DNA of 63,409 nucleotides, counting the filler, from Bigelowiella natans CCMP2755 (taxonomy: Eukaryota; Protista; Cercozoa): assembly GCA_000320545.1 (NCBI GenBank). It is 6 parts of 6 records of this genome, joined end to end, with 100 filler letters (N's around TTAATTAATTAA, not from the genome) between each part and the next. Parts side by side here need not be neighbours in the genome. Positions count along the whole stretch, not along the records: positions 26,123 to 53,310 come from ADNK01002250.1; 5 more parts are not named here. One strand, 5' to 3'. The stretch's first letter is position 1; each line of letters starts with the position of its first letter. The notes below the pieces were generated by a model. That model searched no databases, was not told the origin of the DNA, and saw only the letters and a program-made list of their open reading frames with translations. A program made the translations under genes and the position numbers. Shown piece by piece: positions 26,330 through 52,735 of the stretch.

Positions 26330-29300
26330 GCCTACTATCCATCCCACCTCTGGACACCCGTATACACACATCCCTACGAGGACTCCAACAACTTTGTCCC
26401 CTTCCACTTTATCTCCTGCTACCCAAAGCCCTTCATCGTGCTCCCCCTCGACTCGATCACCATTAACGTTTTCTCCTACATCGCTTTCGCCTTCCACACA
26501 TTCTCCATCCTCATGCTCCCCAACATCTGTCGCACCATCAACGCTGTCGCCGACTTCAATGTCGCCTACAAGTACGTTGAAGTTGCCCTTGTTCCCATAT
26601 ATTTGTGGGAGATGATGTGTGGTGTGAAGGGATGTTTGGGTCAATGTTGGACTTAATCGCCATCTTATGATGATATCGATAGTAGCGCGTCTAAGAATTT
26701 TTAAAAAACATGCTTAAAATTGATGCCGATGATTGTTTTAGGTGCTGCTCCAACAGTCACGCCGACAACATGCGCTCCTACAAGTACATCGCCAACGTCG
26801 CTCTCCCCCACCTCCTTGAGCCCTTCTACATGTGCTCCTACAAGTACATCGCCAACGTCGCTCTCCCCTACCTCCTTGAGCCCTTCTACATGTGCTCCTA
26901 CAAGTACATCGCCAACGTCGCTCTCCCCTACCTCCTTGAGTCCTTCTACATGTGCTCCTTCCTCTGCCTCACCTTCCGAGGCGCCAACGACGGCAAGTCC
27001 GACGATGTCTCCGAGTACAGGTACGACGCTTTTGACATCAGTGATAAAGCAGAATTCGATACTGCCCGCTACTACCTGTGGTGGAGTGCTGTCAGTATTT
27101 CTACCTTCAACCTCGTGCATACATTGAAATGGATCATTCGTGCCTATTTATGAGGAGAGATACGTGTATGCACGTTACATGATATTACACACACACACAT
27201 ACACACACGAGAGCGCGCATATGCGTGCGTACACACCAGACAACATTATAACGTGGAACAAACGATCCCTAAAAATATTACGTTGTTTCCTCCTCCTCCT
27301 CCTCCTCCGTCTCCTTGGTCGGTATGATTAGGTTCGCCGTTGACAGAAGCTCCAACGACGGCACCCACCTCTATCGCGCCTGCGACAGTTTCTCCGTCTT
27401 CGACTCCATTGACAATGACGCCGTCCTGCGGTCCTTCTACTTCTAGTCCGTTGACGGTAATCCAGATGCATTAGTTATCTCTCGAATATGGTTTCCCACC
27501 TTCATGTTGCGACATGACGCGAATCAATTTTTTGTTCCGTTTGGGGCCTGTACGGAAACGTCCCAGATTTCATCTGCATCGCGTTGTTTTCTCCTTTCGC
27601 CATCCGCCAGGAGGCAAGAAAACGGACATTCAAATATGGTTTTCCCCTAAGGGAAATCCCTGCTCATTCATTGAAAAATGTTCGTGCATATAAATGTAGG
27701 TCGCGCCATCAAATGTGCCAACGACGATGCAGCCTTCACATATGCCTACGACTCTAAGTCCGGCTACAAATGCGCCCTCTGTATCCCCCACCACCATTGC
27801 TCCAAGCACATGCAGCCCCATTACATCCACCCCAACAGAGGTTCCAACTTGCAATCCCACTTCTATGTCTCCGGTTACTGGAACACCGACTCTCTCACCA
27901 AGTACGGTGTCTCCGACAACGAGTCCATCTACAGTCTCCCCGGTACAGTAGTAGTAGTAGTAGTAGGAGGAGGCAATAGTAGATGTAGTTGAAGAAGGGT
28001 TAGGGATACTCTTTGGAGTCACGCAATTTTACTGATATCGACGATGTACGATTCTTAGGCGACTGAGAGTCCATCCCAAAGTCCCACAAGTGCTGTGCCT
28101 TCGCAGTCACCATCAACCTTGACACCGACAACATCCAGCCCAAAGACTGGCAGCCCGACTACATTGAGTCCTTCTACAGGTGAGGATATGTTAACAGAAC
28201 CTGACTTTGTGGTGGTGGGTAATTATCACAGCACTCCCAACGCATGCGATTACCTTCTTTTTTTTTTTCCGCTCAAAAACTGTCTTTCTCCCTCCCGTCC
28301 CCCCTATTTTTTTCTCTGATCCTGTCGTTTGTTTGCCTCTATTCATGGTGCTCCCCCATTACAAAGTCTCTCCCACGAGCTCCAGTCCGACTACGACCAC
28401 GCCGACGACGATGAGCCCTTCGATTTGTTTCCGACAAATCACAGTCCAGGCAACCAGCAAGGAATATAATATTACGCGTGACCAAAAACTTACGATATCG
28501 GCAGGATACCAGTCTGTAACTTGCGCCGGGACAAAATCGACGTAATAACCCCAGCTATGTCACTAAATAGGGCATCATTGAAACTCTCATTGTTGATCTA
28601 ACTGGTGACCTCGATTCATTTTCCTTCAGGTATGCGCACTCCTGGACCCAGACGTCCTCAAATAACAACGTTCTCTCCCAAACAGGAGTCGCAGGCACTA
28701 GCACACCTAACCTGTACCTCCCCCCTTCGACGCTAACTGCCGGAGCTCGATATTGTTTTAACATAACCACAACGATGAGGTCTGGTGGCTATGTTGGGGA
28801 GAGCAGCGACCGAGCATGTGTATCTGTATCCAAGCAGCCTGTCAGCGCCGTCATCGGAGGGGGCTCCTCACGCTACGTGTCACCATTGAATGACCTTATT
28901 CTCGACGCGACAATGAGCTACGACCCTGATAACATCTACTCCGTTCCTGATTCCTACGTTTGGTCGGCGGTCTGCCAGCGGTCGGCAACATCAGCCTTGA
29001 CGGGATCCACGTGCGCGGGAGCAATCAACCCAGCCACGGACAACACCGCTGGCCAGAATAACCCCGGACTTCTACAAATTCCAGCGGAAAAGATCCCAAA
29101 GAGCGGGTGCACGTGCCAATTTGGCGTGCGCGTCGGGTTTTCAGGACACTTCGCGAATGCAGAGGTATCAGTGGAGATTGCTGCACATATCCCCGATGCT
29201 GGTGGCAGCGGCGATGTGGCAATGGGCGGGATTGTAGAAATTCCTTTGTCATTAGTATCAGCGCACATTCCGACATCTATGGGGGCTAAGATAAATCCCG

Positions 29301-32300
29301 GGGAGGTGGCGCGCGTCGTTGCAAGATATCCTGGCAAATCCTTCAATTTCTCGTGGACTATTCGAGGGCCTGGTTTCGACGGAGATGCGAAAATAGAAAA
29401 GGTGCGGTAATCGTAGCATGAGTACCAGTAGGAGTAGTAGTCGTAGTAGTCGTAGCAGTAAAGGTAGATATAGAAGTATGTGGAGAAAAAGGGTGGGGGA
29501 GAAAAACCGGATTCTTCAGTGAGGCGATGTCCGAGCTATTCACGTGTTTCCATGTTCTAGCGTAATCTCGCATTAGATGTTACAATAGCCACTAGACTCA
29601 TTTTTCATACTTGCCCTTACCGTTTTTGTGTTTCCTTCTTCGCTGCACAGTCGCAGACGCTCTCCCCTCTGCTTGGACATCTGTTGGTGCTTAGAGACGG
29701 GGTTCTCCTCCCTTCCTCGAGTTACGTCCTCACAGCAAACGCTCACAATGACTCTTCATTTGAAGGAAGAGCATCATTCGATATCTTAACCCTCGGGAAG
29801 CCATACGGCAGTGAATGCGGTATCTCCCCAAGGGTGGGCGTTGTGTATGACACGCAGTTTTCTGTGTCATGTTCCGACGATTGGCAGGATCCGGACGGGA
29901 TGGGATTTCCCGTCGTCTATCGCCACGAGCTTCTGTCATGGGATGGCCTCACGACTGCCACTGGCACATACTCGGCAAGTGGAAATAACACTGTACTAGT
30001 CGAGGACTCCTCGAAAGTAAAGGCTCTCTTGATCCTTCGCGGGTACAGCCCAGCTTCCTTCCTTCCATACGTATTCCTCCCCATCGGCGACCACACGCGG
30101 AACTACACGCTGCCAATGCGGACCAAGATCCGAGGGTTCTATGGGACGATATCAGAAGTCTACTACTTCGTCCGCGTCGCGCCCCCCCCCGCCCCATTAG
30201 ACGACAGCGTTTTAGAAGAGATGTTCGAAGAAGAGACTACTGCCGCAGCAGAGAGTGGCGACGTCGGCACAACGACGTCTTCAATCACAAATCTAATGAG
30301 TGTGCTAACGACACCATCTCCTTCCTCGACGCAACCTCCTTCATCTTCAGGATCGTCAGTGTCTCCGACGGTGATGGGCGGTTCTGCTGCAGCTACTGCA
30401 TCTCCTAGCGTCTACGTTAACAACACGCGGCGGAAGAAGCTTATCTCGAGCGCCATCTCGCAACTGGATGTCGTCAACCAACGCTCAGCAAACACCACTG
30501 AGAACGCTGCTTCTGTCTCACAGACTCTCAGCACAGTCGTCAGTGCAGCTAAGGATAGCGACGTATTGGACAAAGACGTTGGGAAATCGGTACTGGTACT
30601 GGCAGAGAATGTGCTAGTAGACATGCAGGCTATCAATAGCGAGAGTGCAGGAGGAAACTCCTCGAACGCTAACAACAATAATAGCCCATCGTCTTCGTCA
30701 GCCTTATCGGCCGAGCTGAAGGATAATGATTCTGAGGGTGAAGAAAGTGCCATTGACAAGCTATTTCAAGCAGCATTGGATGCGCTCTCAGCCGACGATG
30801 TCGACTTGGAGATGATGGACGAATTCTTCGAGCTATTGGGGCTGATGACTGATGTCGCCACGCATAAATCAGAGGCCGGTGAAGCTCCAAAGATTTTGCA
30901 ATCCGGAAACACGTCGCTACAAGTCTCTAAAGTCGACCAAGACTCTGCCGAGGGGAGCGACTTGGTTTTCTCCTCGCTCATGGACCTCATTGGAGATGGC
31001 GGCGAGGGAGACGAAGACGTAAGCAGTTCTGGTGGCATCCCGTATGGAGAAATCATCATCCCAGATGGGGTCGTGGAGGAGTGGATAGAAGAGTATGGAG
31101 ATGACTTTGAGTTCTCGTTCTTGAATTCGGAAGACGACTTTCTCCAACGTGCAGTCGATAATGCGATTGACTTCCTCGAATCCGAGGGCTTGCTGCGACC
31201 GTATACACAGCAGCAGTACCAACTGCTGCAACGCCCTGAAGTGAAGCGTCAACTGGGCATCAGCCACCCCCATTTGCTCGCATCATCGTCACAATCTTCC
31301 TCAAATACTTCCCAGAGACAGCGAAGTAGTGAGAACGTCACCGTAGTCTCCGGTGTGATGAGGTTGACGGCGCAAAAGGGCAACCAGGAGCTCAATTTCA
31401 AATCGCGCACGCCCATCATCATTATGCAAGAACAGATGAGAAGCACAGAAGGCGCGCGGTACCTCTCCTGCGACACATGGAACTCGTCTATTGGAACCTG
31501 GCAAGAAAACAGACGGGGCGGTCACTGCGAGCCGCAATACTCGAACATGTTCAACATCACCACCAGTTTCAGTGACTCAATCGGGGGGTTCCGTCTTACG
31601 TCTCGGCACGTCCAGATCCACGTCAACCCTCCTACTTCTGAAGACTTCGATTCGCTTTCTTGGGACAACATTTTCGCGACATCAGGGCCGCTCCTTGCGT
31701 TCTCCCTCACGTTTGGCATATTCTTGCTGCTGCTCCCCTGCGTGCTATTCCATGACCATCAGGTCATGATGTTGATCGACTTTGGCAACAAAGAGTCTAA
31801 GCTTCACAAGCGCGTAAAGACTGCAAATATCCAACGCCGTAGAGCATCTATGGGCAACTTGTTCATAGAGGATGATTTTAGCGAAAGTAGCGTGGCCGAT
31901 GGCCGACGTGCTGCCAATAATGCAAAACATAATGCTGTTAATAGGTTTTCCCAAGTTGCACCCTCGCAGGGGCATTTACGGGAAAACAGCCTGGAGGATT
32001 CTAAGAAGCAATTTTGCTCAGAATCGTCATTAGTGTCCTCGGTCAATATGGCAGCTTCTCCTGCAAATATGGGCTTTGGCACGACTTTCTTCAATCCAAA
32101 TCGAAACCCTGGAAGTGATATCGACGACGACTCGTCCACGTCTTCCGAGTCCAGCGATGATAATTCCGTCGCTATCAGCAATGCTTCATTAGGATCCCAA
32201 TTGAAATCCGGCTTCAATATGCCTAACGCCTCGTCTACGACGACAACGATGCCGTCGTTACCAGGGATGGCAGATGTTAGCAACGACAGCCTTGAAGCAA

Positions 32301-33806
32301 AAGAAGCTCCCCCCACCATGATCCCTGTCCGAACACTGACTCTTCGAGGGCGCGGTAGATCACGTGGGAGAAGAGGAAGAAGAGGAAGAGGAGGAAGGAC
32401 GGGAAGAATAGGCATCACGACGATGCGTACATCCCTCTCGAGTTTAGGGACAAGCATCTTGGCTCTCAAAAGAGTCTCCGAAGGAAAAGCAGGGGGGGCA
32501 GCAGCAACAGCAACTACAAGTAGCATCAGCGGGGGCCAGCTGATGGCCTCCTCTGCTTCGCATTCAACACGCGGTAGGCGTAGCATCCGAGGAAGAGGGG
32601 CAGGAGGTCGACGTGGAGGTAAACTAGCCGCGCGTGTGCGAAAGGCGCTCGGGAACAAACTAAAACTCCTTGCACAGAATGGGGTGGGTCCGGATCTTGC
32701 ATCTCGCAAAGAAGCAGCGAGCCAGAAGAGCTTCGCACACATTGGAGCAACCTCCGTCTCAGCTTTCCCCAAAGTTAGTAGCAGCAACAACGATCTGACT
32801 CCAACTCTTCCGGCGTCATCCACTGTCTCCGGAGAGCATCTTGCAGGGAGCAGCTCGACAAGGGTGTCGGAGAGCAGCAGCGATTCCAAAAGCAAAAGTT
32901 CTGATTCTGCAACCCGCAAGGCCACTGATCCGAACATCGAAAAGAAGATGCTGAAGAACTTCAAAATCGACCTCGCAGACACGGAAGAGGACGACGCGGC
33001 TGAGAAACTGACATTTCGCGGCGCCTTGCACGAAATGTGGCGGGAGCATCCTTGGACATCGATGTTCTCGTGCGGGCCCGATGACGAGCATAATGGCTTC
33101 GAGAGGCTGTGCAGTTTTTGCTTAATGTGGTCCATATCGGTTGCGATGTGTGGGTTCTTCTACGGATCCGGGGATGACATGGCCTCTACATGGGTGGTGG
33201 GCATGATTTCGGTTTTCATGTGCTTGCCGTTCGTGAAGCTGAATGCCTACCTACTGAGCAACTCAGACAGCATCAAACGCCAGAAGATTCGTGCTCGCGA
33301 CCAGGCCGTTGTAACTAGCTATAAGTCTAGAAGAAATATGGTGGATAATAGCACTGCGGAGGAGGAGACCAAGGAACCTAGATTTTCTCTTCGAATACAC
33401 TACTGCACACTCTTGTGGCACGTGGTCCTCATCGCTTTTATGACGCTGTTGGCGATTATGTATGCAATAAGGTTCCAGAATTTAGAGGGTGACCTGACAG
33501 CGTTGTGGATTGCATCCACGCTGCAGGGGCAATGCATTGATGCAATCATCGTGGAACCTTTCCTGGTGATCGTCCTGTGGATGGCGAAGGGAAGGTGCGT
33601 GCATTTTTGGTTTATTTGAATAAGTGTGCGCACTGTGGATGATGATGATGATGATGATATTGATGCTGTGTGTGTAAGAGAATGTGTGCGTGTGCGAAGA
33701 TACTTTCTCCGAATCTTTCATGCTAGACATTCCCACTCACGATCTGCATGCCATTAGATGCGAGCTTGTGGCCGAAGCTGTTGCTGGATTCCTTGGTGTA
33801 GAGTAA
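26330..33806 (+). CDS. Polycystin-1/REJ-like multi-pass membrane protein with Ser/Thr/Pro mucin stalk (5' end missing)
   Basis: SPT-rich exons; REJ motifs LILDATMSYDPD, LVLRDGVLLPSSSYVLT, KPYGSECGISPRVGVVYDTQFSVSCSDDWQDPD; GPS-like CDTWNSSIGTW...GGHC; TM; PKD1-like EHPWTSMF...FERLCSFCL...MCGFFY and further TMs; last exon CELVAEAVAGFLGVE* (TAA 33804-33806). Confidence 0.85.
26771..26959 (+). repeat. 60-bp coding tandem repeat x3 (CAPTSTSPTSLSPTSLSPST)
   Basis: Near-identical units start at 26771, 26831 and 26891. Confidence 0.95.
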
Positions 33807-35199
33807 ATCCTAAATGATTGTGGAAGATAGAATTATTCTTTATTTCCTCATTACATTAGGCATTATGTATCCACCAGTCATTAGTGAATTATGTCTTATT
33901 TTTGTTGTTGTAAATTACACATTAACATGTAGTATCACGAAGAAGGCATGTATCGCATGTGTGTATCGCCATTAATAAAATATCATAGGCCGCGTGCGCT
34001 AATGATAGACAATGCTAAACACAACATGTACTTGTACGCCCATCACGTCGATCTAGACGTGTACAACGCATGTAATATATGACACATGGCGTGCGTTCGT
34101 CATCTGCAAATTGTGACAATAATATAATTGGCGCTGCTCGATTCTAGCTGCGCGGAATACATGGCGGTCTAGCGGTGCATAACATGCCATGTATATTGAT
34201 ACATGACGTGACATCAGAACGTCATATATTATATACCTGACGCAACACTATCTAGCTATGCATGAAATGCTGGGCAATCGGATATCGATCATATCGATGA
34301 TCATGTCGTAATTTACTGCTACATCCGTCTTGTGCATGACTAGATAGTGAGCTCCTGGTTAGTGTCGTAATGTCATTAATAAGGGCATCTTGACTTGCAC
34401 ATGCATGCGACATATAGAGCATATGACACCGTGAGCGCAATTTACAACACTCTAACAATCCATTATTCAATATATGAGACAGATAACAGCACATCAAGCT
34501 ATGTAGATAGAACAACATTTTGTCAATATATAATATATACATATATATAGCGAGATTGATGTAATGAAATTATTACATTCTTTCAATGGCCATCCTAATG
34601 CATGTAGATAGCTTTGCAACACTGCGATATATATAATGCCCACGTTGTGTTTATCGTTAACTACCGTTAAAAGTGCTGCTATAAATCACAAAAGAGAATA
34701 TAATGATTCCCAAGCATAGTAAGTAGGGTCCCTAATTGCAATGATACAAAATCATAAATGACATGGCGCATTGACTTTGCGGACGTACATGCATTGGGTA
34801 AAGAAAGGCGCTAATACGAATATCTATTTCTGCGCTATGATGAAGTAACGAGTGTGTTTTTGGATTGGACGATTGTAAAACAAGTTAACAATAAAGCAAC
34901 AAAATGATCAGTACTAACATACCCATCGCCGGAACCATAGCTGGACAGTGCTGATATCGTTGAAGTCGCATTGGCACCTGCGTAGCAAGGAATGCAAGTC
35001 ATAAACCACGTAACAAGAGAAGAGTGTGGACCGCAGAATATATAGCCATTCTCCCACTCACCAATAAATAATTGTTTTGTTGAATTAAGAGAGATACAAG
35101 TTGATATTAAATTACAACATGCCTCTATGCAATAACAGCCTCTATAAAATCATCACAATATTCTTAATCTTCGTTTCGTCTCTTTCAACCAACTATCAA

Positions 35200-35737: not shown

Positions 35738-36440
35738 CTACATACCCACAGGAAATAATCAATACAGATTTCATCATAATCCAATCCCGGTACGATTGAG
35801 TCAATTCTAAAACTTCAACAAAAATGCGCTGATGAAAGTACTGGATGGGATAGACTTTACACAGACGATACATAGGTAAGATATCTGCCGATGAAACAGA
35901 AAAAACTCATCAACATTATTTTACTTTTCTCTTTCGTCCTCTCGAATTACTTCTCACACACGCCGCCACGATGTCCGAGCTTAATCAAAATGTTTAAACT
36001 CCTTAGCCGTCACCAACCCACAACTACCTACCGCCGCACTCGCGAGAAATACTCCCAGCACAAACCTGGTGTGCATGCACATACGCTGGGGCGTTTGCAG
36101 GGGGCGGTCCTTGCTGTTGCTGCGCCAGCACGCCATACTTGGCGTTGGAATCAGCCATGTGACACGGACAGCTGTGTTGTGCTTTCTTCGAATTAGGTCT
36201 ACCGTGCTTGTTTCCTTGTCGTCGCAGTCCTCTGTTTCCTCGCGATTGCAGGCCGTTTTACATACCGCGACTTAGTCGTTAGCCCATGTCGCAGTGAGCA
36301 AAATCGATCTGCGGATGATGACCCGAGGGATCTGCAGATTTGTGCTCCGTTGCTCATTGTTCATTGCTACGTTGTTCCGTCGATGCCTCATTGCCCAACA
36401 GCAGAGAGCAGTAGCTGGCCGTGATGGTAGCAGCAGTAGC

Positions 36441-36476
<36 letters not shown>

Positions 36477-37157
36477 CGTAGTAGTTGTTGTTGTTGGAGA
36501 AATGGTGGCAGTGGGGTCATTCGGTGCATTCTCCATTGCATTGCCAATGAGAGTGCAATGGCGGCTTTTCTTGTTGTGTTCATGTTTGCTGTCCTCTGAA
36601 GCTGAGCGCCATGCCACCAAGTGCTGTTCGCTACCTCCATTCCAATTTGATGGCAATTTTTCTTGCTGTCTTCTCATGTGCTGTGTGCCAACATGAAACG
36701 CTCACGTCTGTCATGTTTCTTTGTTTGCCTTCTGCATCGTTGCAAATGACATCATTGGTGATTCCACGAATCTGAAAGTGCACTGTTTCATGCCAAAGTC
36801 GCGCGATTGTGCATGCAGCAATTGCAAATTGCACAGCAAGCAGATGTTGACGCTCGAACGAGCTAACGAGGTTCCTCGCTGTGATTTCGCATGCCAGCAC
36901 ATGCAAGAATTACTAGCTCCTGAGCTGGATGCAGCAATGCATGACAAACGTGCATGCCCGAACAAGTGCAGAGTCCACCATCAACGGACGAATGTTAAGA
37001 ACAACAGCCTACAACCAAGCTATGCGAGCAATGAACAAGTTAATTCGGCAAAGAAAGCTACACTGCTGTGCTGAATCTTTACATGATTCATATTTACAAA
37101 ACTACAAGATCCCATAAAATTGAGCCGAGGTTGTTCCTCACATGACGGTGCGAATAG

Positions 37158-42956: not shown

Positions 42957-45016
42957 ATGGAGTCGCAAATGAGAACCGAGGTGCCTTCGTGTAAAGCATA
43001 CTGCTTTCACTATCAGAGAGATTTGTTGCCAAGAAGAAGGAATCCGCTCGTTACTGAAGAGAGTTTTGGGATATGCAGGAGGACGATAAGACGGGAGAGT
43101 CAGGGTCAGGACAGAGCTCGCAGAAAGGGGCTGCTGACTCCAAGATCGAAGGTGTTGTCAACATATGAGGGAGGGAAGGAGGGAGGGAAGGAGGGAGGGG
43201 GCATCTTGTAACGAATTGGAACATTGTTCTTCCCTGTGTTTATAATTTGTAGAGGATGAAGAGATGCAGGAAGCAATTCACTTCTGCGACATCCTCAAAG
43301 CTTATGCAAACTACGCGACGCACTGCTTTCAATTGGTACGATTGACTTCGTCGAGACTGCCTCTTCCCATATGCCACTCTTGTTGCCCACTCCTCTCTGG
43401 TTATCGCCGTGTGTTATCATAATCAATGTCTTCCGGGGTGATCTACTGCGCCTTCATCGAGGATTTATGAAACGAAAGCAGACATTACCCATCGAGACAA
43501 CATTTGTTACCTTTTATCAGTTCAATCGTTTGGAGTCCGATTTTCGATCGATACCGAAGATTCAGCAAGCTCTTGTTCCCAGTACAGTACTCTTTCATCG
43601 ATAGATGATCATCCTAACGAACCTATTGCGCGACATCAATGACAACCGACTTCCTTCCTCTGGCCATTTCTTTCTTTCATACCAGGTTTCGAGAAAAAAC
43701 TGAGGACGATGAAGGCGTGTGTGGGAGCAAACCAGTTCTTTGTAAGGAAAATCCTGAACGAACGAGTAATATTATTGACATGTTGATTTTCCGTGGAATA
43801 CTGTTCTTGGAGCCTTGTCATCGGTCCTTAGTGTTTTGTTACTCTTCTTCTTCTTCTTCTTCTTCTTCTTCCATTTCTCGTTTGTGACGGTAACGATTCT
43901 TTATTGTTGTTTATTCTTGCGTCTGATCATCGCACAGCGTGTCTTCATGAATTCGGATACAATTAACTACGATTGGGTCATGAGGAAAAACCGACCTCCA
44001 ACCCCAGGTCTATTAACATCATCATCAACTTGAAGAAGAAGAAGAAGAAGAAGAAGAAGAAGAAGACGTAAAATGGTGTTCGTGGGATGGAGGAGCTGTT
44101 GCTTGTTATTTCGCCAATACGTGTACTACTACTACTACTACCAGTACTTATGTATTACCTCTCTACTTTCTCCACAACCATGATGACGTTCGTTGTGCGT
44201 GTATGATGATGATGGCCTCCTCCTGATGACGTTGTGTATGACCTTCCTCCTCAGGGAATATGGAAAAGGTGCTGAGCACGTTGAAGCAATGTGTTAGAGA
44301 CTGGAGGTACTCTTTGTGCGATGTCCTCTTTCCAATATCTCTTCTTCTTCTTCTTCTTCTTCTTCTTCTTTCCATTCATAATCCATTTGCTCATCCTTTC
44401 ACAGCGAGGAAGGAAAAGAGGAGCGAGCGATGTGTTATGGGCCGATTCTGTCTGAGATAAAGAAATGTAATATTATAGTACAAAGGGCAGCAGCAACACG
44501 GGAATCAAAATGAACATGTCTACACATCTCACTCCTCTTTACCCCCCCTCCTTTCAATCAACAACCCCCAACGCCTTGTTAGTCTTTTACCTACCCATCA
44601 TTCTCACTATTGTTGTTCTTGTTGTTATTAGTATCATTAGTTATTGTCATTACTAATAACTATTGTCATCATTTGTCGCTGTTGTACTAGTATTCCCCAA
44701 GCCGAGCACGAAGATAAGGATGTTGGTGCCAGGATGCGGGATGTCTCGCCTTGTTTGGGAAATAGCAAATGCAGGTTCACATGAATCATCATCATCATCA
44801 TCCTCATCACCATTTGTCGGTTCACATGAATCATCATCATCATCATCCTCATCCTCATCATCATCATCCTCATCACCATTTGTCGTTGATTGGAATATCT
44901 TCACTATATAATGTGTATCTCTCTACACCGTACAGGGTTTCATGCCCAGGGCAATGAGTTCTCTTATTTTATGCTGCTTTGCTCCTTCCTCATCCTCAAC
45001 TGCACAAAGAAAGTGA

Positions 45017-45048
<32 letters not shown>

Positions 45049-45507
45049 TGAATAGTAATAGTAGTAGTAGCAGTAATGATAGCAATGCGTAGCCAGGCGA
45101 CGATGATAGCAACGAAAGGGCGAAAATGATAGTGAATGCACAACGCGCACACTCCTCAATCACTACTACTACTCCTACCATCAGGCCGCTGTATATCAGC
45201 TGTTTCCGTACATCCATCAAACGCAAAATCAATATTCTCCAAGAGGGCAGCTAACGTAGGGAGTATTATTTATTCCCCGCTGATTCATCAACGGCGTCTT
45301 ATGCGTGCAACAACATCATTTGTTAGAGACAGACCATCAACGGCGTCTTATGCGTGCAACAACATCATTTGTTAGAGACAGACCGTCAATGGTGTCTTAT
45401 GCGTGCAACAACATTTTTGTAAGCGACAGACCATCAATGGCTGTTTTCGTTATTCGTTTCACCCTTCACGTTCCCCCTCCTCCTCCTCTCCAAGTCTTAT
45501 CATCATC

Positions 45508-45545
<38 letters not shown>

Positions 45546-46675
45546 AATCATAGTCCACATGCATACCCAAACAGGCGTGTACTGGTGCCGGACGTGGACC
45601 CTTCAACTATCCCCGATTCGTCGTTATCCATGGTAGTAAAGTAACCCCCCCCTTCAACTATATCCCCAATTCTTCGTTATCCATATGGTAGTAGTATGAT
45701 AATGATGATGATGATGATGATGATGACGACGATGATGATGAGGATGATGAGGATGATGGTAGTGATGATGGTGATGGTGGTGAGTTTAGACTAGGTACGG
45801 CCCTATTGTCGATGTTGGGTGTTATCGCATTCATCATTGTCTTGTTGCCCAGAATGCAGGCGATTTCCAGGAAATATACGAAGAACAAGTAGAGGTGTGT
45901 ATGATAAGTGCTCACCGACGATGATCTCACCATTCATTTCTATCATATTCGTCGTTGTCCTCGATTCGAGAGGGGGGGGTTAACGATTGGCCATAACGTC
46001 AGCAGATTACAATATATTGTGCTGCTGCTATTACCCTGTACATACGCACTTCTAATGATACTGCAATGAAGGAAGATTGAAAGCCAGCGGAGGACGATGA
46101 GCTTTTCCTCCTCCTCCTCCTCCTCCTCCTTGATATTTTCCTTCTTGTCGTAATGCTTTCCGCTACTTACTACCTGCGAGAATGAACGGCACTGGTGAAC
46201 ATATAATACATATAAAGGTGTATATTAATCATATTATCAGGAGTGGGATTGCGTGGCGACTTGCTTCTTCATTGACACGGCCAACAACGTTATTGTACGT
46301 TCATCCGCCGTAGCTACAACAACAACAACTACTACTACTACTACTACTACTACTCATGCCATCACGTAGGATAAGCTTGGGTGATACAGGAATACAACAG
46401 AATTTGATGTCGTTGCTCATATGTCATCAAACACACAATAAATGGTGACAACAACAACGGCAATAATATTAGTGATGATTAATGATGATGATAATGATAG
46501 TTGCAATAACAACAACAGGAGTATATCCGCCTGATCTCGCAACTGCTGAAAGTCGGAGGATACTGGGTCAACTTCGGCCCCTTGCTGTACCATTACTCTG
46601 GGATGAGAAACGAGATATCGGTAGAGCTCTCCTGGGAGGAGGTAAGAGTAGCAGTAGCACCACCACCACCACCAC

Positions 46676-48097: not shown

Positions 48098-48127
48098 TAT
48101 ATATATATGTATATATGTATATATATG
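48098..48127. repeat. (TA)15 tract at the LINE 3' flank (12 TA + 3 TG)
   Basis: Read directly; lies about 20 nt after the ORF2 stop on the minus strand. Confidence 0.9.
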
Positions 48128-48146
48128 AGACGGATGTAATGAAGAA

Positions 48147-51100
48147 TTAAATTTTTTCAATGGTCATCCTGATGTAGCTGTGCAATGCAGCGGCTACAGC
48201 GCTAATGTTACATCTGTTGGTTTCTGCCACCACGTGCTTCATGCAATTGAAAGCGTCCTCATGCGACCGATGTTGCCGCGCACTGCGCGCAGCAGTTCTG
48301 GAGTCCTTTTCAGCCTTTGTCAGCCGGTTCGTGTCGTCGTTGCGATTCATGATCGCGCGCATTTGATTGCGCAATCTGATTTGTTCTCGACTGTGTGTTG
48401 GACATTGCAGGAGATGATCCATGTCCTTCAGGATGCCACATGCATCGCACGTGGCATCTTTCTCTGTGCATTGTCCACGTGAGAACATGAATTTTCCAAG
48501 ATTGCCGACATCACAGATGGCGCGCATCCATGATGTGGCAACACTTGGAAGTTTTGGTTTGATGCCGGTGATCGAAGATGACGGGAGGAATCCAAGATTC
48601 TTGAGATGCACAGCGCGCAATGAATCATTGGACCATTCCTCTTCGAATTCGTTGAAAGCACAGGATTTCATCACCTTGTGATGTTTTTTCAGTTCTTTTT
48701 TCAGCGCCTCTGTTGTCGCCAAAACGGTGGGCAATTCGTCATCTAACAAATCGTCAGTGATCGATTTGAGCCGACGAAACCAGGATGCTTTGTTCCACGC
48801 ATTTGTGGACACATCAATCCACGATGTGCCATCTGGCATTTTTCGATTTTCAATGATGAAGCCACAACTGCTCCAATCATTTGTTCCCTCATGGATTTGA
48901 GGACCGCTGCCTGTGTCGATCCATGCATCAGTGCGCAACCATGATTTGGCACACTGCACTTTGGTTTGACGTCGGGGTGGCAACGTGCCAGTGAGGACGT
49001 GGGGGACGTCGTTGGAGATGGATCCAGGTGATCCCAATGCACGTTTCAGGGTTTGGGATTCCATGGAATCCATCTGTTTTGTTCGCATGTTTCTTCGTGA
49101 TCTCCACATTGGAGCTGCGCATCTGCTGGATGCAAGGAACCATGATTTGCAAAATTTTAGTCCAACACTTGGCGGTGCGAGGTGTCTGGAATGACACAAC
49201 CTTGACAAAAACCTTCGCTTCTTTTGCAATCTCAGGTGAGAAGCAAGAGCATGTTTTTCAAAGGTTGATTTGTTGTCGAAGATCAGTCCGAGACATCTGC
49301 CGCTGTCGACTCTTTTCACTTTGCCTTGGAGATTGAGAGAGATGTTCCAGGAGGTTTGGTGTCGGCAGGCTTTGTTTCTTTTGTCAATTGTGAGGTGCCC
49401 GCTCTTGTCCCCATTGAATCGCATCCACCATTTCATGCACCAGTCCGTCACTTGGTTCAGGTCGGCCTGGATGTCACCTTGCATTTTCCCCCATCGGTTT
49501 GGCGAAAACAATTTGTGGGGGGTGACGTCGTCACAGTGCACTTGGAAATCTGTGTTGGTGATTTGTTCGCAAGTGTCGCAACAGGTTGTGAAAAGGAAAC
49601 AGCTGAGAGATGATCCTTCGGGGACGCCGCTCCCAAGGTTCATGTGCTCAGAGAGAGTGTTGCCAAATCTGAATCTGGCGGTGCTATCTCTGAGCCAGTC
49701 GTCGATCCACAGCAACAGCGAGCCTCGCATTCCGCATTTGTCATGCAACTTGCGTGTCATGCCGGAATGCCAGGCTTTTGGATGAGCTTTGGAGGCATCT
49801 GCAAACAACATGATGGCTGCAAGCTTTTCATCGTGCACTCCATCCTCGATTGACTGCGTCATCTTTGTGAGTGCAGTTTCACAGGATCGATTTTTCGTGA
49901 ATGCGCACTGATGTTTGCTGACATTTTTGGGGGGCACAGCTTCGCGGAGACGTTGCTCCATTGGTTTGTCTTCCATTTTTGAAGCTATTTGCAGGAGAGA
50001 AATCGTTCTCCCGTTGAGAGGGGTGTCAAGTTCTTTGTTGGCCTTGGGGATGAGACAAAAAATGGCCGCCTTGCGTGAGCCATCTCGGGCACCCCATCCA
50101 CATGACATGTTGAATGCAGCTGACCATGGTTCATGGAGTTTTTTGCTTTTTTTCAATGTGTTCAGGTGAACACCATCATCGCCAGGAGACTTGCACGGTG
50201 ATGCTTTGTTGATCACGTTTCTCAGTTCACACATGGAAAAATCTCTGTTGTGTGAATTGACACTGTGAATCTTTTTGTCTTCACTTTCCCTGAAGGCACT
50301 TCTCCAGGCCTCAGTTTCAGCGTGAAAGGTTCGATTTTTCTTGTCTGACGGGTGTGATTTGCAGATGTGTTTCCACTTCGCAACACACACTTCACATTTT
50401 TCATCTTCAGAGGTTTCGCCGTCGAGTCCTCCGAGTTCATCCCGCCCTCTGGATTTTTGGAATGATTTGCACAGCACTCTGGCATGATTCCCATTGTTGT
50501 GTTTTTCAAAGCGAGACAAAAACAATTGCCATGCTTCGCACTGAAGGGTTTCGGTGGTTCGATCAAGTTCAGCGTTGATTTCTTGGATCTTGGTTTCCAT
50601 CAATTTTCTCTTCCGAAATTTCCTTCCATGTTTCAAGGATCCAAGTGACTTTTCTTGTTGATCTTTGATGAATTTGCATTTTTTGTCGTTTTGGTGTGGC
50701 TTGATTGGACTCCAACGTTGTCGTTTTTTTGGTGTGCAACCATCAAAAGCTTTTCCGGTGAAGTCCCAGAACCAGCGTTCAAGCTTTTTTGCATCAGCCT
50801 CCGATTGAACGTTTGATGTGCGCTGGTGCAAGTGTTCGGTGACATCATTCAATTTTTCGTCAAATCGTTTCACATCAAATTTGTCGACATCACACATCAT
50901 TGGTGAAGTCTGTTGATGGATTGCCACAGGTTTTCCAAAGTGGACACCGAAATGGTCACTTGTCGTGGTGTGGGCCATCTGATGTTCTGTTTGGTGATGA
51001 TGGACATGCAATGCACAACGTGCATGATGCACACAGCTGTGTCCATCATGGTGTGCGAAGTTTGAGGAGCACAGCACATGATCAAGTGTGCTTGTGTTTC

Positions 51101-51698
51101 CTTTTCTGAAGCATGTGGCTTCCCCAGGGTTGATCATCATGATGTCATCATCCGACAACCACTGGTGCAAACATCTGCCACGTCTGTCTTCTTGGTTTCG
51201 GACATCGCAGGTGGAGTGCTCAGCGTCAGTGTCCCCCACTGTGATGTGTTTTTTCCATTTCTGTTTCCGAATGATGTTCATCATGAAATCTGATCTCTCT
51301 TTCAGATGTGAGATGTTTTGGTGTGGTTGGAGGTGCACCCTTGTGACAGCGTGTTTTTCAATGCAGTGTGTGAAAAAACCAATGTCGCAATTGTTGTCTT
51401 CTGTGGGTGCATGAATCACATCTGTGTTCTTTTTTCTCAATCCAAAGCTCCCAGAGGAGCCGCTCGTCCGAATCACTTCGTGTCCCGCTGGAGGATGCAG
51501 CCTCTCCGACTCTTTGAGGCGGCCTTCCCCAAACCAGGCGAGTTCGATGTTGTTGGTGGTTGTCATTTCTTTTGACATGTCACATCTTCTGTTTGTTCTT
51601 TGCCTGCCTTGTTCAGTTCCGTTTTTGCTGCGCATGTTTTGGTAGCAGCATGGGAGACTCAAATGATCAACCATCTTTGCGTGTCCTTTTGTTTTCAC
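48147..51698 (-). pseudogene. LINE ORF2, open for 1183 aa but catalytically degenerate
   Basis: APE: CYQNMRS, VGDTDAEH (GDxN), TLDHVL, SDH. RT: SPGDDG, LIPK, RTISLL, QCAF, DASKAH, GVPEGSSLS, VHCDD (YxDD), RCLG (YLG). C-terminal CDACGILKDMDHLLQC. Only 2 Tyr. Confidence 0.88.
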
Positions 51699-52078
51699 AT
51701 GCCCTGAATCGTGGGTAGCTGCCCTGATGTGTGATTTGTGAATTCAGCAGTTTGGTGACCTCTTCATGCGAGTGCACGAACAGCTGAACTAGAGGGCCCT
51801 TGCCGAGAGGTTCTGCTGCTGCGACTTTCACATCGATGTTGGTTTCGATTGTCTGCTTGATGATTCCATTTCGTGTTGATTTTTCCTGCTCGTTAGGTCC
51901 CAGCCTTGGGCTTCTCAGAACTGCAGAGTGCTCACTTGGCCTTGATTTAGCTGCTCTGACCATGGTCACCAATCCAAAGAGTGAGGGAAGGAACGATCCT
52001 TGTCCTAACTGGTGTTCGGTGTTGAGCAGATCCAGGCAAGCATCCATCTTTGATTCTCTGGAGCCTTTGAAGAACACT
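51667..52078 (-). pseudogene. Possible short or truncated LINE ORF1
   Basis: Open frame whose end (AAA GAT GGT TGA) overlaps the ATG of MVDHLSLPCCYQN at the APE start; no domain recognised, and TpA loss alone can open frames. Confidence 0.35.
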
Positions 52079-52108
52079 TGTGCATGTGTGTATGTGCACA
52101 CATGTGCA
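52079..52108. repeat. Fossil (TA)15 tract converted to a TG/CA mosaic at the LINE 5' flank
   Basis: TG TG CA TG TG TG TA TG TG CA CA CA TG TG CA: every in-register dinucleotide is TG, CA or TA. Confidence 0.75.
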
Positions 52109-52735
52109 AGCCGTCTCACACTAGCACATTCATATGCACCTAATGTGCAGTCTAGCAGTGCAGCATATCTCTATTATTCGCCGCTAAATCTAGCCATGCT
52201 AGCATGCACGATGAACATGACGCATCCGTGCTCTCTAGCTCGGACAGCATCTATCTTGAAATGTGTGCAAGAATCTTGCTCCTGCTGTAGCAAGTTTAAC
52301 GCTTACTAGCTTACTGCGATCGGTGCTGTGAGGTCTAGAGGTGCATGGAGTGCATGGTTAGCAATATTAATGAGTCGGTAGTCAAGAGCGCTATGACACC
52401 ACTACACGCTGCGTGACCACCTAGATCATGCTATCTGCTGTTATAGTCGACTTCTCGACTTACTGTGCGATGTAAAGTCTTATGCAAAGCGAAGCAAGCG
52501 AGAGCGGTCTCCAATCATCCACTAGCTATCCCTTCTAGCCTTCATAGCACTTGCCTTTTAGCTACAGCACTATTATTTGAAACGTATTTGGCCACAACAA
52601 GTAAGCTTAGCTTGATACGCCTCATGAGCGAGTTGTCCGCAAAAGTAGAAAGATATTGCACGCTCAAATGCCAGGTTGCGGCTACATGATACTCTGTTTC
52701 TCTCGTTAGCTACGTAGAGCCGCTCCTTCCTCTCT

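What the first reader, a model, noticed from the sequence alone, without database searches (positions are those of the whole stretch)
48098..52108. LINE sits within a (TA)n microsatellite whose two halves record the mutation direction
Seen: the 3' flank 48098-48127 is 12 TA + 3 TG. The 5' flank 52079-52108 is 15 in-register units that are all TG or CA except one TA, with no CG. Inference: (i) the element inserted into, or targets, a (TA)n tract; (ii) the ancestral state is TA, polarising the change; (iii) mutation extends into flanking DNA, so it happened after integration rather than on the RNA; (iv) it fades on the side facing the CARNMT1 gene, where the last ~80 nt of the element also keep TpA.
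Basis: partly seen in the sequence, partly recalled or inferred. Interest (0 to 1): 0.8.

Follow-up and report, generated by a model that had tools for sequence, protein, structure and literature searches.

The report
TpA-hypermutated dead LINE in TA microsatellite
A dead, 5'-truncated LINE in the alga Bigelowiella natans has lost nearly all its TpA to TpG/CpA, and a neighbouring TA repeat shows the same damage; a 2026 preprint already describes this editing process, so the finding is correct but mostly not new.

Summary
The window is nuclear DNA of Bigelowiella natans, not human.

- **The element.** A 5'-truncated APE/RT LINE lies on the minus strand at 48126-52078. It has 16 TpA in 3951 bp (observed/expected 0.06, against 0.83 in the background). 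ORF2 has 2 Tyr in 1183 residues.
- **Direction of change.** Relatives show that TA is the older state. Of 153 TA sites in a Tara Oceans relative, the window has 54 CA, 42 TG and 3 TA. Of 41 Tyr, 18 became Cys and 15 His. The two outcomes are interleaved at random, so both DNA strands were hit.
- **The flanks.** The 5' tract at 52079-52108 is 9 TG, 5 CA and 1 TA, with no CG. It lies outside the homology detectable with a 64%-identical relative. A tract like it is expected about 2e-5 times by chance.
- **Prior work.** This matches the TpA-to-TpG/CpA hypermutation of integrated foreign DNA reported in mutation-accumulation lines (bioRxiv 10.64898/2026.01.13.699255). That paper's low-TpA gene lists include four paralogs of this element, and probably this locus.

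- Long (TA)n is not obligatory. Most copies end in one to three AT units.
- Much of the TpA loss predates this insertion. It is seen across the lineage and shared with a paralog on another scaffold.
- The sparing of the 3' end is specific to this copy.

The new parts are the microsatellite record and the base-level boundaries of the mutated zone.

The parts
48098..48125 (.). 3' (TA)n tract of 14 units (12 TA + 2 TG). It is the element's tail and/or the target microsatellite, and is nearly unmutated.
   Evidence: Loss is 2 of 14 units here against 14 of 15 in the 5' mosaic (Fisher p = 2e-5).
48126..52078 (-). 5'-truncated non-LTR retrotransposon (LINE) copy, hypermutated at TpA.
   Evidence: Pfam Exo_endo_phos_2 and RVT_1. 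60% amino-acid identity over 99% of ORF2 to P0001 from a Tara Oceans contig. TA observed/expected 0.06.
48147..51698 (-). ORF2, 1183 codons and open, but with only 2 Tyr. The RT motif reads HCDD where relatives have YCDD. It stays open because TA-to-TG/CA cannot create a stop codon.
51685..52086 (-). C-terminal remnant of ORF1, corresponding to residues 344-478 of the 483-residue ORF1 of L001. This shows the 5' truncation.
   Evidence: Of 21 L001 TA sites here, the window has 8 TG, 6 CA and 2 TA.
48126..48209 (-). 3'-terminal 84 nt of the element. It keeps 6 TpA and has no detectable TA loss against close relatives.
   Evidence: 0 of 3 reference TA sites are lost here against 18 of 19 in 48210-49204 (Fisher p = 0.003).
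52079..52108 (.). TG/CA mosaic of 15 pyrimidine-purine units (9 TG, 5 CA, 1 TA, no CG). Best read as the 5'-side (TA)n, a target-site duplication or half of the target, after TpA hypermutation.
   Evidence: No homology to ORF1 of L001 upstream of about 52086.
52111..52119 (+). 9-mer CCGTCTCAC, identical to the family's 3' terminus plus 'AC', inverted relative to the element and lying just beyond the mosaic. Unexplained.
44248..46647 (+). Exons of a carnosine N-methyltransferase (CARME) gene. This is context for the spared side.
   Evidence: PF07942 hits with E = 4.6e-14, 5.2e-9, 2.1e-6 and 2.8e-5 on separate exons.

Best explanation
The window is nuclear DNA of Bigelowiella natans. A non-LTR retrotransposon with APE and RT domains inserted on the minus strand, truncated within ORF1. 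It landed in or next to one of the many (TA)15-18 microsatellites of this genome.

The copy, and before it its progenitor, were then exposed to the host's TpA-specific hypermutation of integrated foreign DNA. Each TpA is converted once, to TpG or CpA, depending on which strand is hit. After that the site is no longer a target. This explains three things:
- almost no CpG is produced;
- no stop codons are created;
- the ORF stays open although Tyr codons are erased and the protein is dead.

The mutated zone runs from about 48210 to 52108. It includes the (TA)n on the element's 5' side, now a TG/CA mosaic. It ends within 14 bp beyond that tract. It excludes the last 84 nt of the element and the 3' (TA)n.

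Shown: the dinucleotide specificity, the polarity, the involvement of both strands, the 5' truncation, and the multi-copy family with unmutated and independently mutated members.

Inferred: that the mosaic was once (TA)n, which enzyme acts (an adenine deaminase on DNA was proposed by Mettrop et al.), and what sets the boundaries.
For: - **Organism.** The REJ-domain ORF is 100% identical to jgi/Bigna1/89894.
- **Element.** Pfam APE and RT domains, and an ORF1 tail homologous to L001.
- **Specificity.** TA observed/expected is 0.06 against 0.83 in the background, with CA at 1.82 and TG at 1.40. Rho_TpA is 0.00-0.13 in four consecutive 1-kb windows. Rho_CpA+TpG is 1.48-1.64.
- **Against L001.** 153 TA sites give 54 CA, 42 TG and 3 TA, while other dinucleotides are retained at 30-56%. 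41 Tyr give 18 Cys, 15 His and 1 Tyr. A runs test on the order of outcomes gives z = -0.05.
- **Against 93%-identical copies L005-L010.** 18 of 22 TA sites are changed (10 CA, 7 TG, 1 CG). The other 41 differences are spread over the 1132 compared columns.
- **Independent outcomes in paralogs.** Tyr945 is Cys here and His in P0165. Ile873 is Thr here and Met there. Tyr728 is kept in P0165. Against P0014 there are 2 identical and 2 different outcomes.
- **Literature.** De novo TpA-to-TpG/CpA mutations occur only in integrated foreign DNA of B. natans. Among 324 low-TpA coding sequences, RVT_1 and Exo_endo_phos_2 are enriched. Paralogs 130944, 137665 and 132805 are in its Table S6. Paralog 144798 is in a second supplementary gene list. 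Model fgenesh1_pg.57_#_78, from the same scaffold as this window, appears in both lists.
- **Mosaic.** Not chance. It is the only long mixed TG/CA tract in the piece, whereas the six other (TA)15-19 tracts are at least 88% pure (four of them 94% or more).
Against: - No empty-site allele and no second copy with both junctions could be obtained, so the (TA)n origin of the mosaic remains an inference.
- For the 5' junction only a 64%-identical relative (subfamily B) was available. A subfamily-specific internal sequence cannot be strictly excluded.
- 16 of 18 derived residues are shared with paralog P0165 (p = 7e-4 if outcomes were independent). Most of the body's mutations therefore predate the split of these two loci and may predate this insertion.
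- If targeting depended on homology between copies, the 3' end that all copies share should be hit hardest. Here it is spared.
- Direct proof that this particular locus mutates in situ is lacking.
Confidence: 0.72

Rival explanations
1. The hypermutation is confined to the element. The mosaic is an ordinary compound TG/CA repeat of the target, or junction filler made at integration, and never was (TA)n.
For: Short mixed TG/CA tracts of 6-8 units occur elsewhere in the piece, at 34396, 36070 and 39081. Pure (CA)16-18 tracts also exist there. The background is rich in CATG and TGCA words.
Against: Tracts of 6-8 units are near chance expectation, but 15 units is expected 2e-5 times. Slippage repeats do not switch strand within one register. 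The unit spectrum (TG and CA mixed, one TA, no CG) is what the element body shows at former TA sites. The tract's length matches the genome's usual (TA)15-18.
Confidence: 0.13
2. All the mutation happened in a progenitor copy elsewhere. The already mutated copy was then moved here, either mobilised in trans or by segmental duplication, and nothing happened in place.
For: 16 of 18 derived residues are shared with paralog P0165 on scaffold 12, including four Tyr-to-His/Cys changes. The close intact lineage is already poor in TpA.
Against: The window has private TpA-type changes and different outcomes at the same ancestral TA. The mosaic lies outside the detectable homology with the family. A 5'-truncated RNA cannot carry upstream flank. 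Mutation-accumulation lines show that the process acts on resident DNA.
Confidence: 0.1
3. Editing of the LINE RNA before reverse transcription, of the ADAR type.
For: ADAR prefers a 5' U (discussed in the preprint).
Against: Sense-strand TA-to-CA (54) and TA-to-TG (42) are equally common and randomly interleaved. Editing of one RNA strand gives only one of them. Non-element DNA appears affected. ADARs are a metazoan family (established knowledge).
Confidence: 0.03
4. A functional element that avoids TpA through selection or codon usage.
For: The ORF of 1183 codons is open. The intact A1 lineage is partly depleted in TpA.
Against: There are 2 Tyr in 1183 residues, against 41 in the relative. 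The catalytic YCDD reads HCDD and KAYP reads KAHP. The copy is 5'-truncated. The ORF stays open only because this type of mutation cannot make stop codons.
Confidence: 0.02

Closest known systems
TpA-to-TpG/CpA hypermutation of integrated viral DNA in Bigelowiella natans (Mettrop et al., bioRxiv 10.64898/2026.01.13.699255)
   Same: Same organism, same dinucleotide, same two products, both strands, and foreign or mobile DNA as the target. Coding sequences with RT and endonuclease-RT domains are already listed as TpA-depleted. Four paralogs of this element are in its supplementary lists, and probably this locus too.
   Different: The preprint works at the scale of 1-kb windows and whole coding sequences. 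It does not mention LINE families, microsatellites, flanks or boundaries. Here a (TA)n tract serves as a natural reporter: one hit per TpA and no CpG. The boundaries are resolved to tens of bases, and inherited loss is separated from loss in place.
Repeat-induced point mutation (RIP) of Neurospora and other fungi
   Same: A genome-level, dinucleotide-specific transition process that destroys mobile DNA on both strands.
   Different: RIP turns CpA into TpA and creates stop codons. This process does the reverse: it removes TpA, removes TAA and TAG, and leaves ORFs open. RIP needs duplicated sequence, whereas the preprint's 186-kb target is single-copy.
APOBEC3 or ADAR editing of retroelements in animals
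   Same: Deaminase-type, context-dependent hypermutation of retroelements.
   Different: Those act on cDNA or RNA intermediates and mark one strand. Here both strands are hit equally, and resident DNA is the substrate.
Microsatellite-targeting APE-type LINEs: Dong (TAA), Waldo (ACAY), Mino (AC), Kibi (TC), Koshi (TTC); reviewed in PMC3812793
   Same: An APE-type LINE whose 3' end is a simple repeat and which is found in a matching microsatellite.
   Different: Those families are flanked by their repeat in essentially all copies. Here only about a quarter of junctions show a long TA tract. No (TA)n-specific family is named in that review.

Membership tests
B. natans TpA hypermutation target (Mettrop et al. 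2026) | The sequence is from the B. natans nuclear genome. | tested here: met
   the 1311-residue ORF is 100% identical to jgi/Bigna1/89894. Paralogs of the element are Bigna1 gene models.
B. natans TpA hypermutation target (Mettrop et al. 2026) | [quoted passage not shown] | tested here: inconclusive
   Rho_TpA is 0.11, 0.05, 0.00 and 0.13, well under the cut-off in all four windows. Rho_CpA+TpG is 1.58, 1.48, 1.64 and 1.58. The second window falls just below 1.52, so only two consecutive windows pass both cut-offs in this window frame.
B. natans TpA hypermutation target (Mettrop et al. 2026) | Changes are transitions at TpA only, on either strand. | tested here: met
   96 of 153 (against L001) and 18 of 22 (against close copies) TA sites became CA or TG. 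The two outcomes are randomly interleaved.
B. natans TpA hypermutation target (Mettrop et al. 2026) | Foreign or mobile origin of the sequence. | tested here: met
   APE and RT domains; multi-copy LINE family.
B. natans TpA hypermutation target (Mettrop et al. 2026) | De novo mutations at this locus in mutation-accumulation lines. | not testable with these tools
   Read data are not available here. The held part of the supplement lists genes, not this locus's mutations.
APE-type non-LTR retrotransposon (LINE) | APE endonuclease and reverse transcriptase in one ORF, with an upstream ORF1. | tested here: met
APE-type non-LTR retrotransposon (LINE) | Conserved 3' terminus, variable 5' truncation, simple-repeat tail. 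| tested here: met
   13 copies end in the same terminus followed by A or (AT)n; this copy is truncated at ORF1 residue 344.
APE-type non-LTR retrotransposon (LINE) | Target-site duplication. | tested here: inconclusive
   The two 14-15-unit tracts could be a duplication of a (TA)n tract, but one is mutated and no empty site is available.
Microsatellite-specific LINE (Dong, Waldo, Kibi type) | Essentially all copies flanked by the target microsatellite. | tested here: not met
   9 of 12 other 3' junctions have 3.5 AT units or fewer, followed by unrelated sequence. Long tracts are still over-represented: 3 or more of 13 against 0.7% of the sequence (p = 1e-4).
Fungal RIP | C-to-T at CpA, giving TpA enrichment. 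| tested here: not met
   The direction is the opposite.
ADAR-type RNA hyperediting | A-to-G on the edited (sense) strand only. | tested here: not met
   54 CA against 42 TG on the sense strand.

The most novel reading that the evidence does not exclude
The hypermutated zone may be set at base resolution by the inserted DNA itself. It includes the 5' copy of the duplicated (TA)n and stops within 14 bp of it, while its 3' edge differs between copies. That would point to a guided recognition of insertions, by RNA or by a mark laid down at integration, rather than to spreading chromatin.

In parallel, the still-intact lineage of this LINE (TA observed/expected about 0.3, Tyr codons kept, present in Tara Oceans metagenomes) may be shedding TpA at tolerated sites under this pressure. 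That would be an arms race comparable to target depletion in viruses under APOBEC or ZAP.
Probability: 0.25. Interest if true: 0.65.

Novelty: already known. Interest (0 to 1): 0.38.

Why it matters
This is a useful independent confirmation at a retrotransposon.

What this locus adds is mechanistic constraint:
- A (TA)n tract inside the zone shows that each TpA is hit once on either strand and then becomes immune, since no CpG appears.
- The zone ends within tens of bases.
- The spared 3' end varies between copies.
- Because the process erases TAA and TAG and creates no stop codon, dead elements keep long ORFs that gene predictors call as genes. This matters for annotating this genome.

Tried and rejected
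- The hypermutated ORF2 found only one close relative by word search. Searching with the relative added only distant LINEs.
No empty site could therefore be sought.
- DNA of the B. natans paralogs is not on record. Their flanks, and the choice between segmental duplication and retrotransposition, stay open.
- L003 and L004 belong to a distant family without a TA tail and were not used further.
- No second fragment of the family lies in the piece.
- The neighbours of the edited TpA show only a weak preference: a 3' T in 20 against 11 of 47 sites.
- There is no strong 5' gradient: 14 of 16 ORF1-tail TA sites are lost.
- A first Markov simulation timed out and was replaced by an exact calculation.
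- The last CARME exon was not found on either side of the element.
- I considered a second, abortive target-primed reverse transcription event, and a tandem or inverted older copy, to explain the 9-mer at 52111-52119. The order of motif and repeat fits neither.
Only column-agreement counts were used.
Full report
**Observation.** 48098-48127 is 12 TA + 3 TG. 52079-52108 is 15 in-register pyrimidine-purine units: 9 TG, 5 CA, 1 TA and no CG.

One correction applies. The TG at 48126-48127 is the complement of the final 'CA' of the family's conserved 3' terminus, seen in 12 of 13 copies. The flank proper is therefore 48098-48125, which is 12 TA + 2 TG.

Between the tracts the sequence is nearly free of TpA:
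- 16 TA in 3951 bp, observed/expected 0.06 against 0.83 outside.
- Only 4 TA between 48210 and 51642.
- CA is raised to 1.82 and TG to 1.40.

A Markov model of the surrounding DNA expects 2e-5 pyrimidine-purine tracts of this length per 23 kb.

**What the element is.** The minus strand carries an open 1183-codon ORF at 48147-51698 with APE endonuclease and reverse-transcriptase domains. Upstream of it lies the last 135 residues of an ORF1.

The closest relative is P0001, at 60% identity over 99% of the length. It sits on a 5-kb Tara Oceans contig (L001) that has a 483-residue ORF1 and normal TpA content. The window copy is therefore a 5'-truncated LINE.

Homology to L001 stops at about 52078-52086. 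The L001 sequence upstream of that point is A-rich and unlike the mosaic. By the only available comparison, the mosaic is not part of the element.

**Organism.** A 1311-residue REJ-domain ORF in the same piece is 100% identical to a JGI Bigelowiella natans model on scaffold 57. The contig is not human.

**Polarity and specificity.**
- Against L001, 153 aligned TA sites are CA (54), TG (42) or TA (3) in the window. Every other dinucleotide is kept at 30-56%.
- Of 41 Tyr codons in the relative, 18 are Cys, 15 His and 1 Tyr.
- The catalytic YCDD reads HCDD, so the protein is dead.
- The ORF is open only because TA-to-TG/CA cannot create a stop codon.
- The two outcomes are interleaved at random (runs test z = -0.05). 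Both strands were therefore hit site by site, which excludes editing of one RNA strand.
- Against much closer copies (L005-L010, 93% identical, from marine metagenomes), 18 of 22 TA sites are changed. The other 41 differences are spread over the 1132 compared columns. A single site became CG.

**Prior knowledge.** A 2026 preprint (bioRxiv 10.64898/2026.01.13.699255) reports mutation-accumulation lines of B. natans. In those lines, two integrated viral regions mutate about 1000 times faster than the rest of the genome, almost only TpA-to-TpG/CpA.

The preprint also finds 324 TpA-depleted coding sequences enriched in RT and endonuclease-RT domains. It finds 124 depleted clusters and proposes a DNA adenine deaminase.

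Its Table S6 contains three paralogs of this element (Bigna1 130944, 137665, 132805). A fourth (144798) appears in a second supplementary gene list. Model fgenesh1_pg.57_#_78, on the window's scaffold, appears in both lists. The preprint does not mention microsatellites, flanks, LINE families or boundaries. The process is therefore known, and this locus is an instance of it.

**Does the family target (TA)n?** Twelve other 3' junctions were recovered. All but one share the same terminus. After it they show:
- a single A, ATA or ATAAT, or two to three AT units, followed by unrelated DNA, in nine copies;
- a long (AT)n in two copies (L001 with at least 15 units, L015 with at least 6);
- a TG/CA/CG-rich mosaic-like tail in one copy (L010).

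(TA)15-19 tracts are common in this genome. There are six others in the 27-kb piece, at least 88% pure (four of them 94% or more), but they cover only 0.7% of the sequence. Three or four long tracts among 13 junctions is therefore an excess (p = 1e-4). TA tracts are favoured, probably because the RNA's (UA)n end pairs with them. They are not required, and part of the 3' tract may be the element's own tail.

**When did the mutation happen?** Three layers can be separated.
1. The intact-looking close lineage (open frame, Tyr kept) already has TA observed/expected of about 0.3.
2. The window shares 16 of 18 derived residues with paralog P0165 on scaffold 12. These include four Tyr-to-His/Cys changes (p = 7e-4 if outcomes were independent). 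A common ancestor copy was therefore already heavily mutated.
3. The two copies then diverged by the same process. Tyr945 is Cys here and His there. Ile873 is Thr here and Met there. Tyr728 survives only in P0165. Against another paralog (P0014) and against mutated copies of the other subfamily (P0013, P0016), outcomes agree only about half the time.

The mosaic is best assigned to the last, in-place layer.

**Boundaries.**
- On the 5' side the zone includes the mosaic (14 of 15 units changed). It ends before 52122, beyond which TpA density is normal (Rho 1.02).
- On the 3' side, 0 of 3 reference TA sites are lost in the last 84 nt, against 18 of 19 further in (p = 0.003). The 3' tract has lost 2 of 14 units, against 14 of 15 in the mosaic (p = 2e-5).
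- With close references, the 3' edge is resolved only to the interval 48210-48537.
- In paralog P0166 the mutation runs through the stop codon (TAA to CAA) into the tail. The sparing is therefore copy-specific.
- A CARME gene lies on the + strand, with exons up to 46647. These were searched exon by exon and not joined. Its last exon was not found. A protective effect of its transcription is possible but untested.

**Verdict.** The phenomenon is already described. The added value is the microsatellite reporter, the boundary resolution and the layered history.

Noticed in passing
window 52111-52119 (+): The 9-mer CCGTCTCAC is identical to the LINE family's 3' terminus plus 'AC', as in copies L005, L008 and L010. 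It sits two bases beyond the mosaic, inverted relative to the element. The chance of this placement is roughly 1e-4 to 1e-3. Neither a second target-primed reverse transcription event nor an older tandem copy fits the order of the parts.
   Followed up: partly
window 36490-36900: A second zone nearly free of TpA: 2 TA in about 400 bp, with 53 TG and 38 CA. It starts right after an intact (TAG)n tract at 36430-36485. Its ORFs have no Pfam hit. It may be another hypermutated foreign fragment.
   Followed up: partly
window 26134-46759: Dinucleotide microsatellites are frequent and of uniform length: (TA)16-18 five times, (CA)16-18 twice, (GA)15 and (GA)19, all within 21 kb.
   Followed up: no
L005-L010: Copies from marine metagenomes, 93% identical to the window, have an open frame with Tyr kept, yet TA observed/expected is only 0.26-0.36. 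Subfamilies B and C have 0.62-0.84. The active lineage may be shedding TpA.
   Followed up: partly
P0166 (Bigna1 84609): In this paralog the stop codon TAA became CAA. The gene model reads on through the 3' terminus into the tail, which reads AT-GT-AC. This shows that the process removes stop codons and can reach the tail.
   Followed up: partly
L008:1103-1272: A complete 3' end is followed after two bases by a 5'-truncated copy of the same family (ORF2 from about residue 476). This is either a tandem insertion into the tail or an assembly chimera.
   Followed up: no
L010:1115-1162: The tail after the 3' terminus is a pyrimidine-purine mosaic of CA, TG and CG with two register breaks, running to the contig end. 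It may be a second mutated TA tail, but the evidence is weak.
   Followed up: no
L015, last 45 nt: This public metagenome contig ends in (AT)6 followed by what looks, from memory, like a Nextera adapter sequence. This is probably untrimmed adapter in the assembly.
   Followed up: no
window 48147-48149: The window copy keeps TAA as its ORF2 stop, as subfamily C does. Subfamilies A1 and B have TGA at the same place. That is a TpA-to-TpG change that preserves the stop.
   Followed up: no
window 28775-33619 (+): A large gene with a REJ domain (polycystin-1 / receptor-for-egg-jelly type), identical to Bigna1 89894. Its interval 32661-33091 is poor in TpA without any TG/CA excess, which is ordinary coding bias.
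   Followed up: partly
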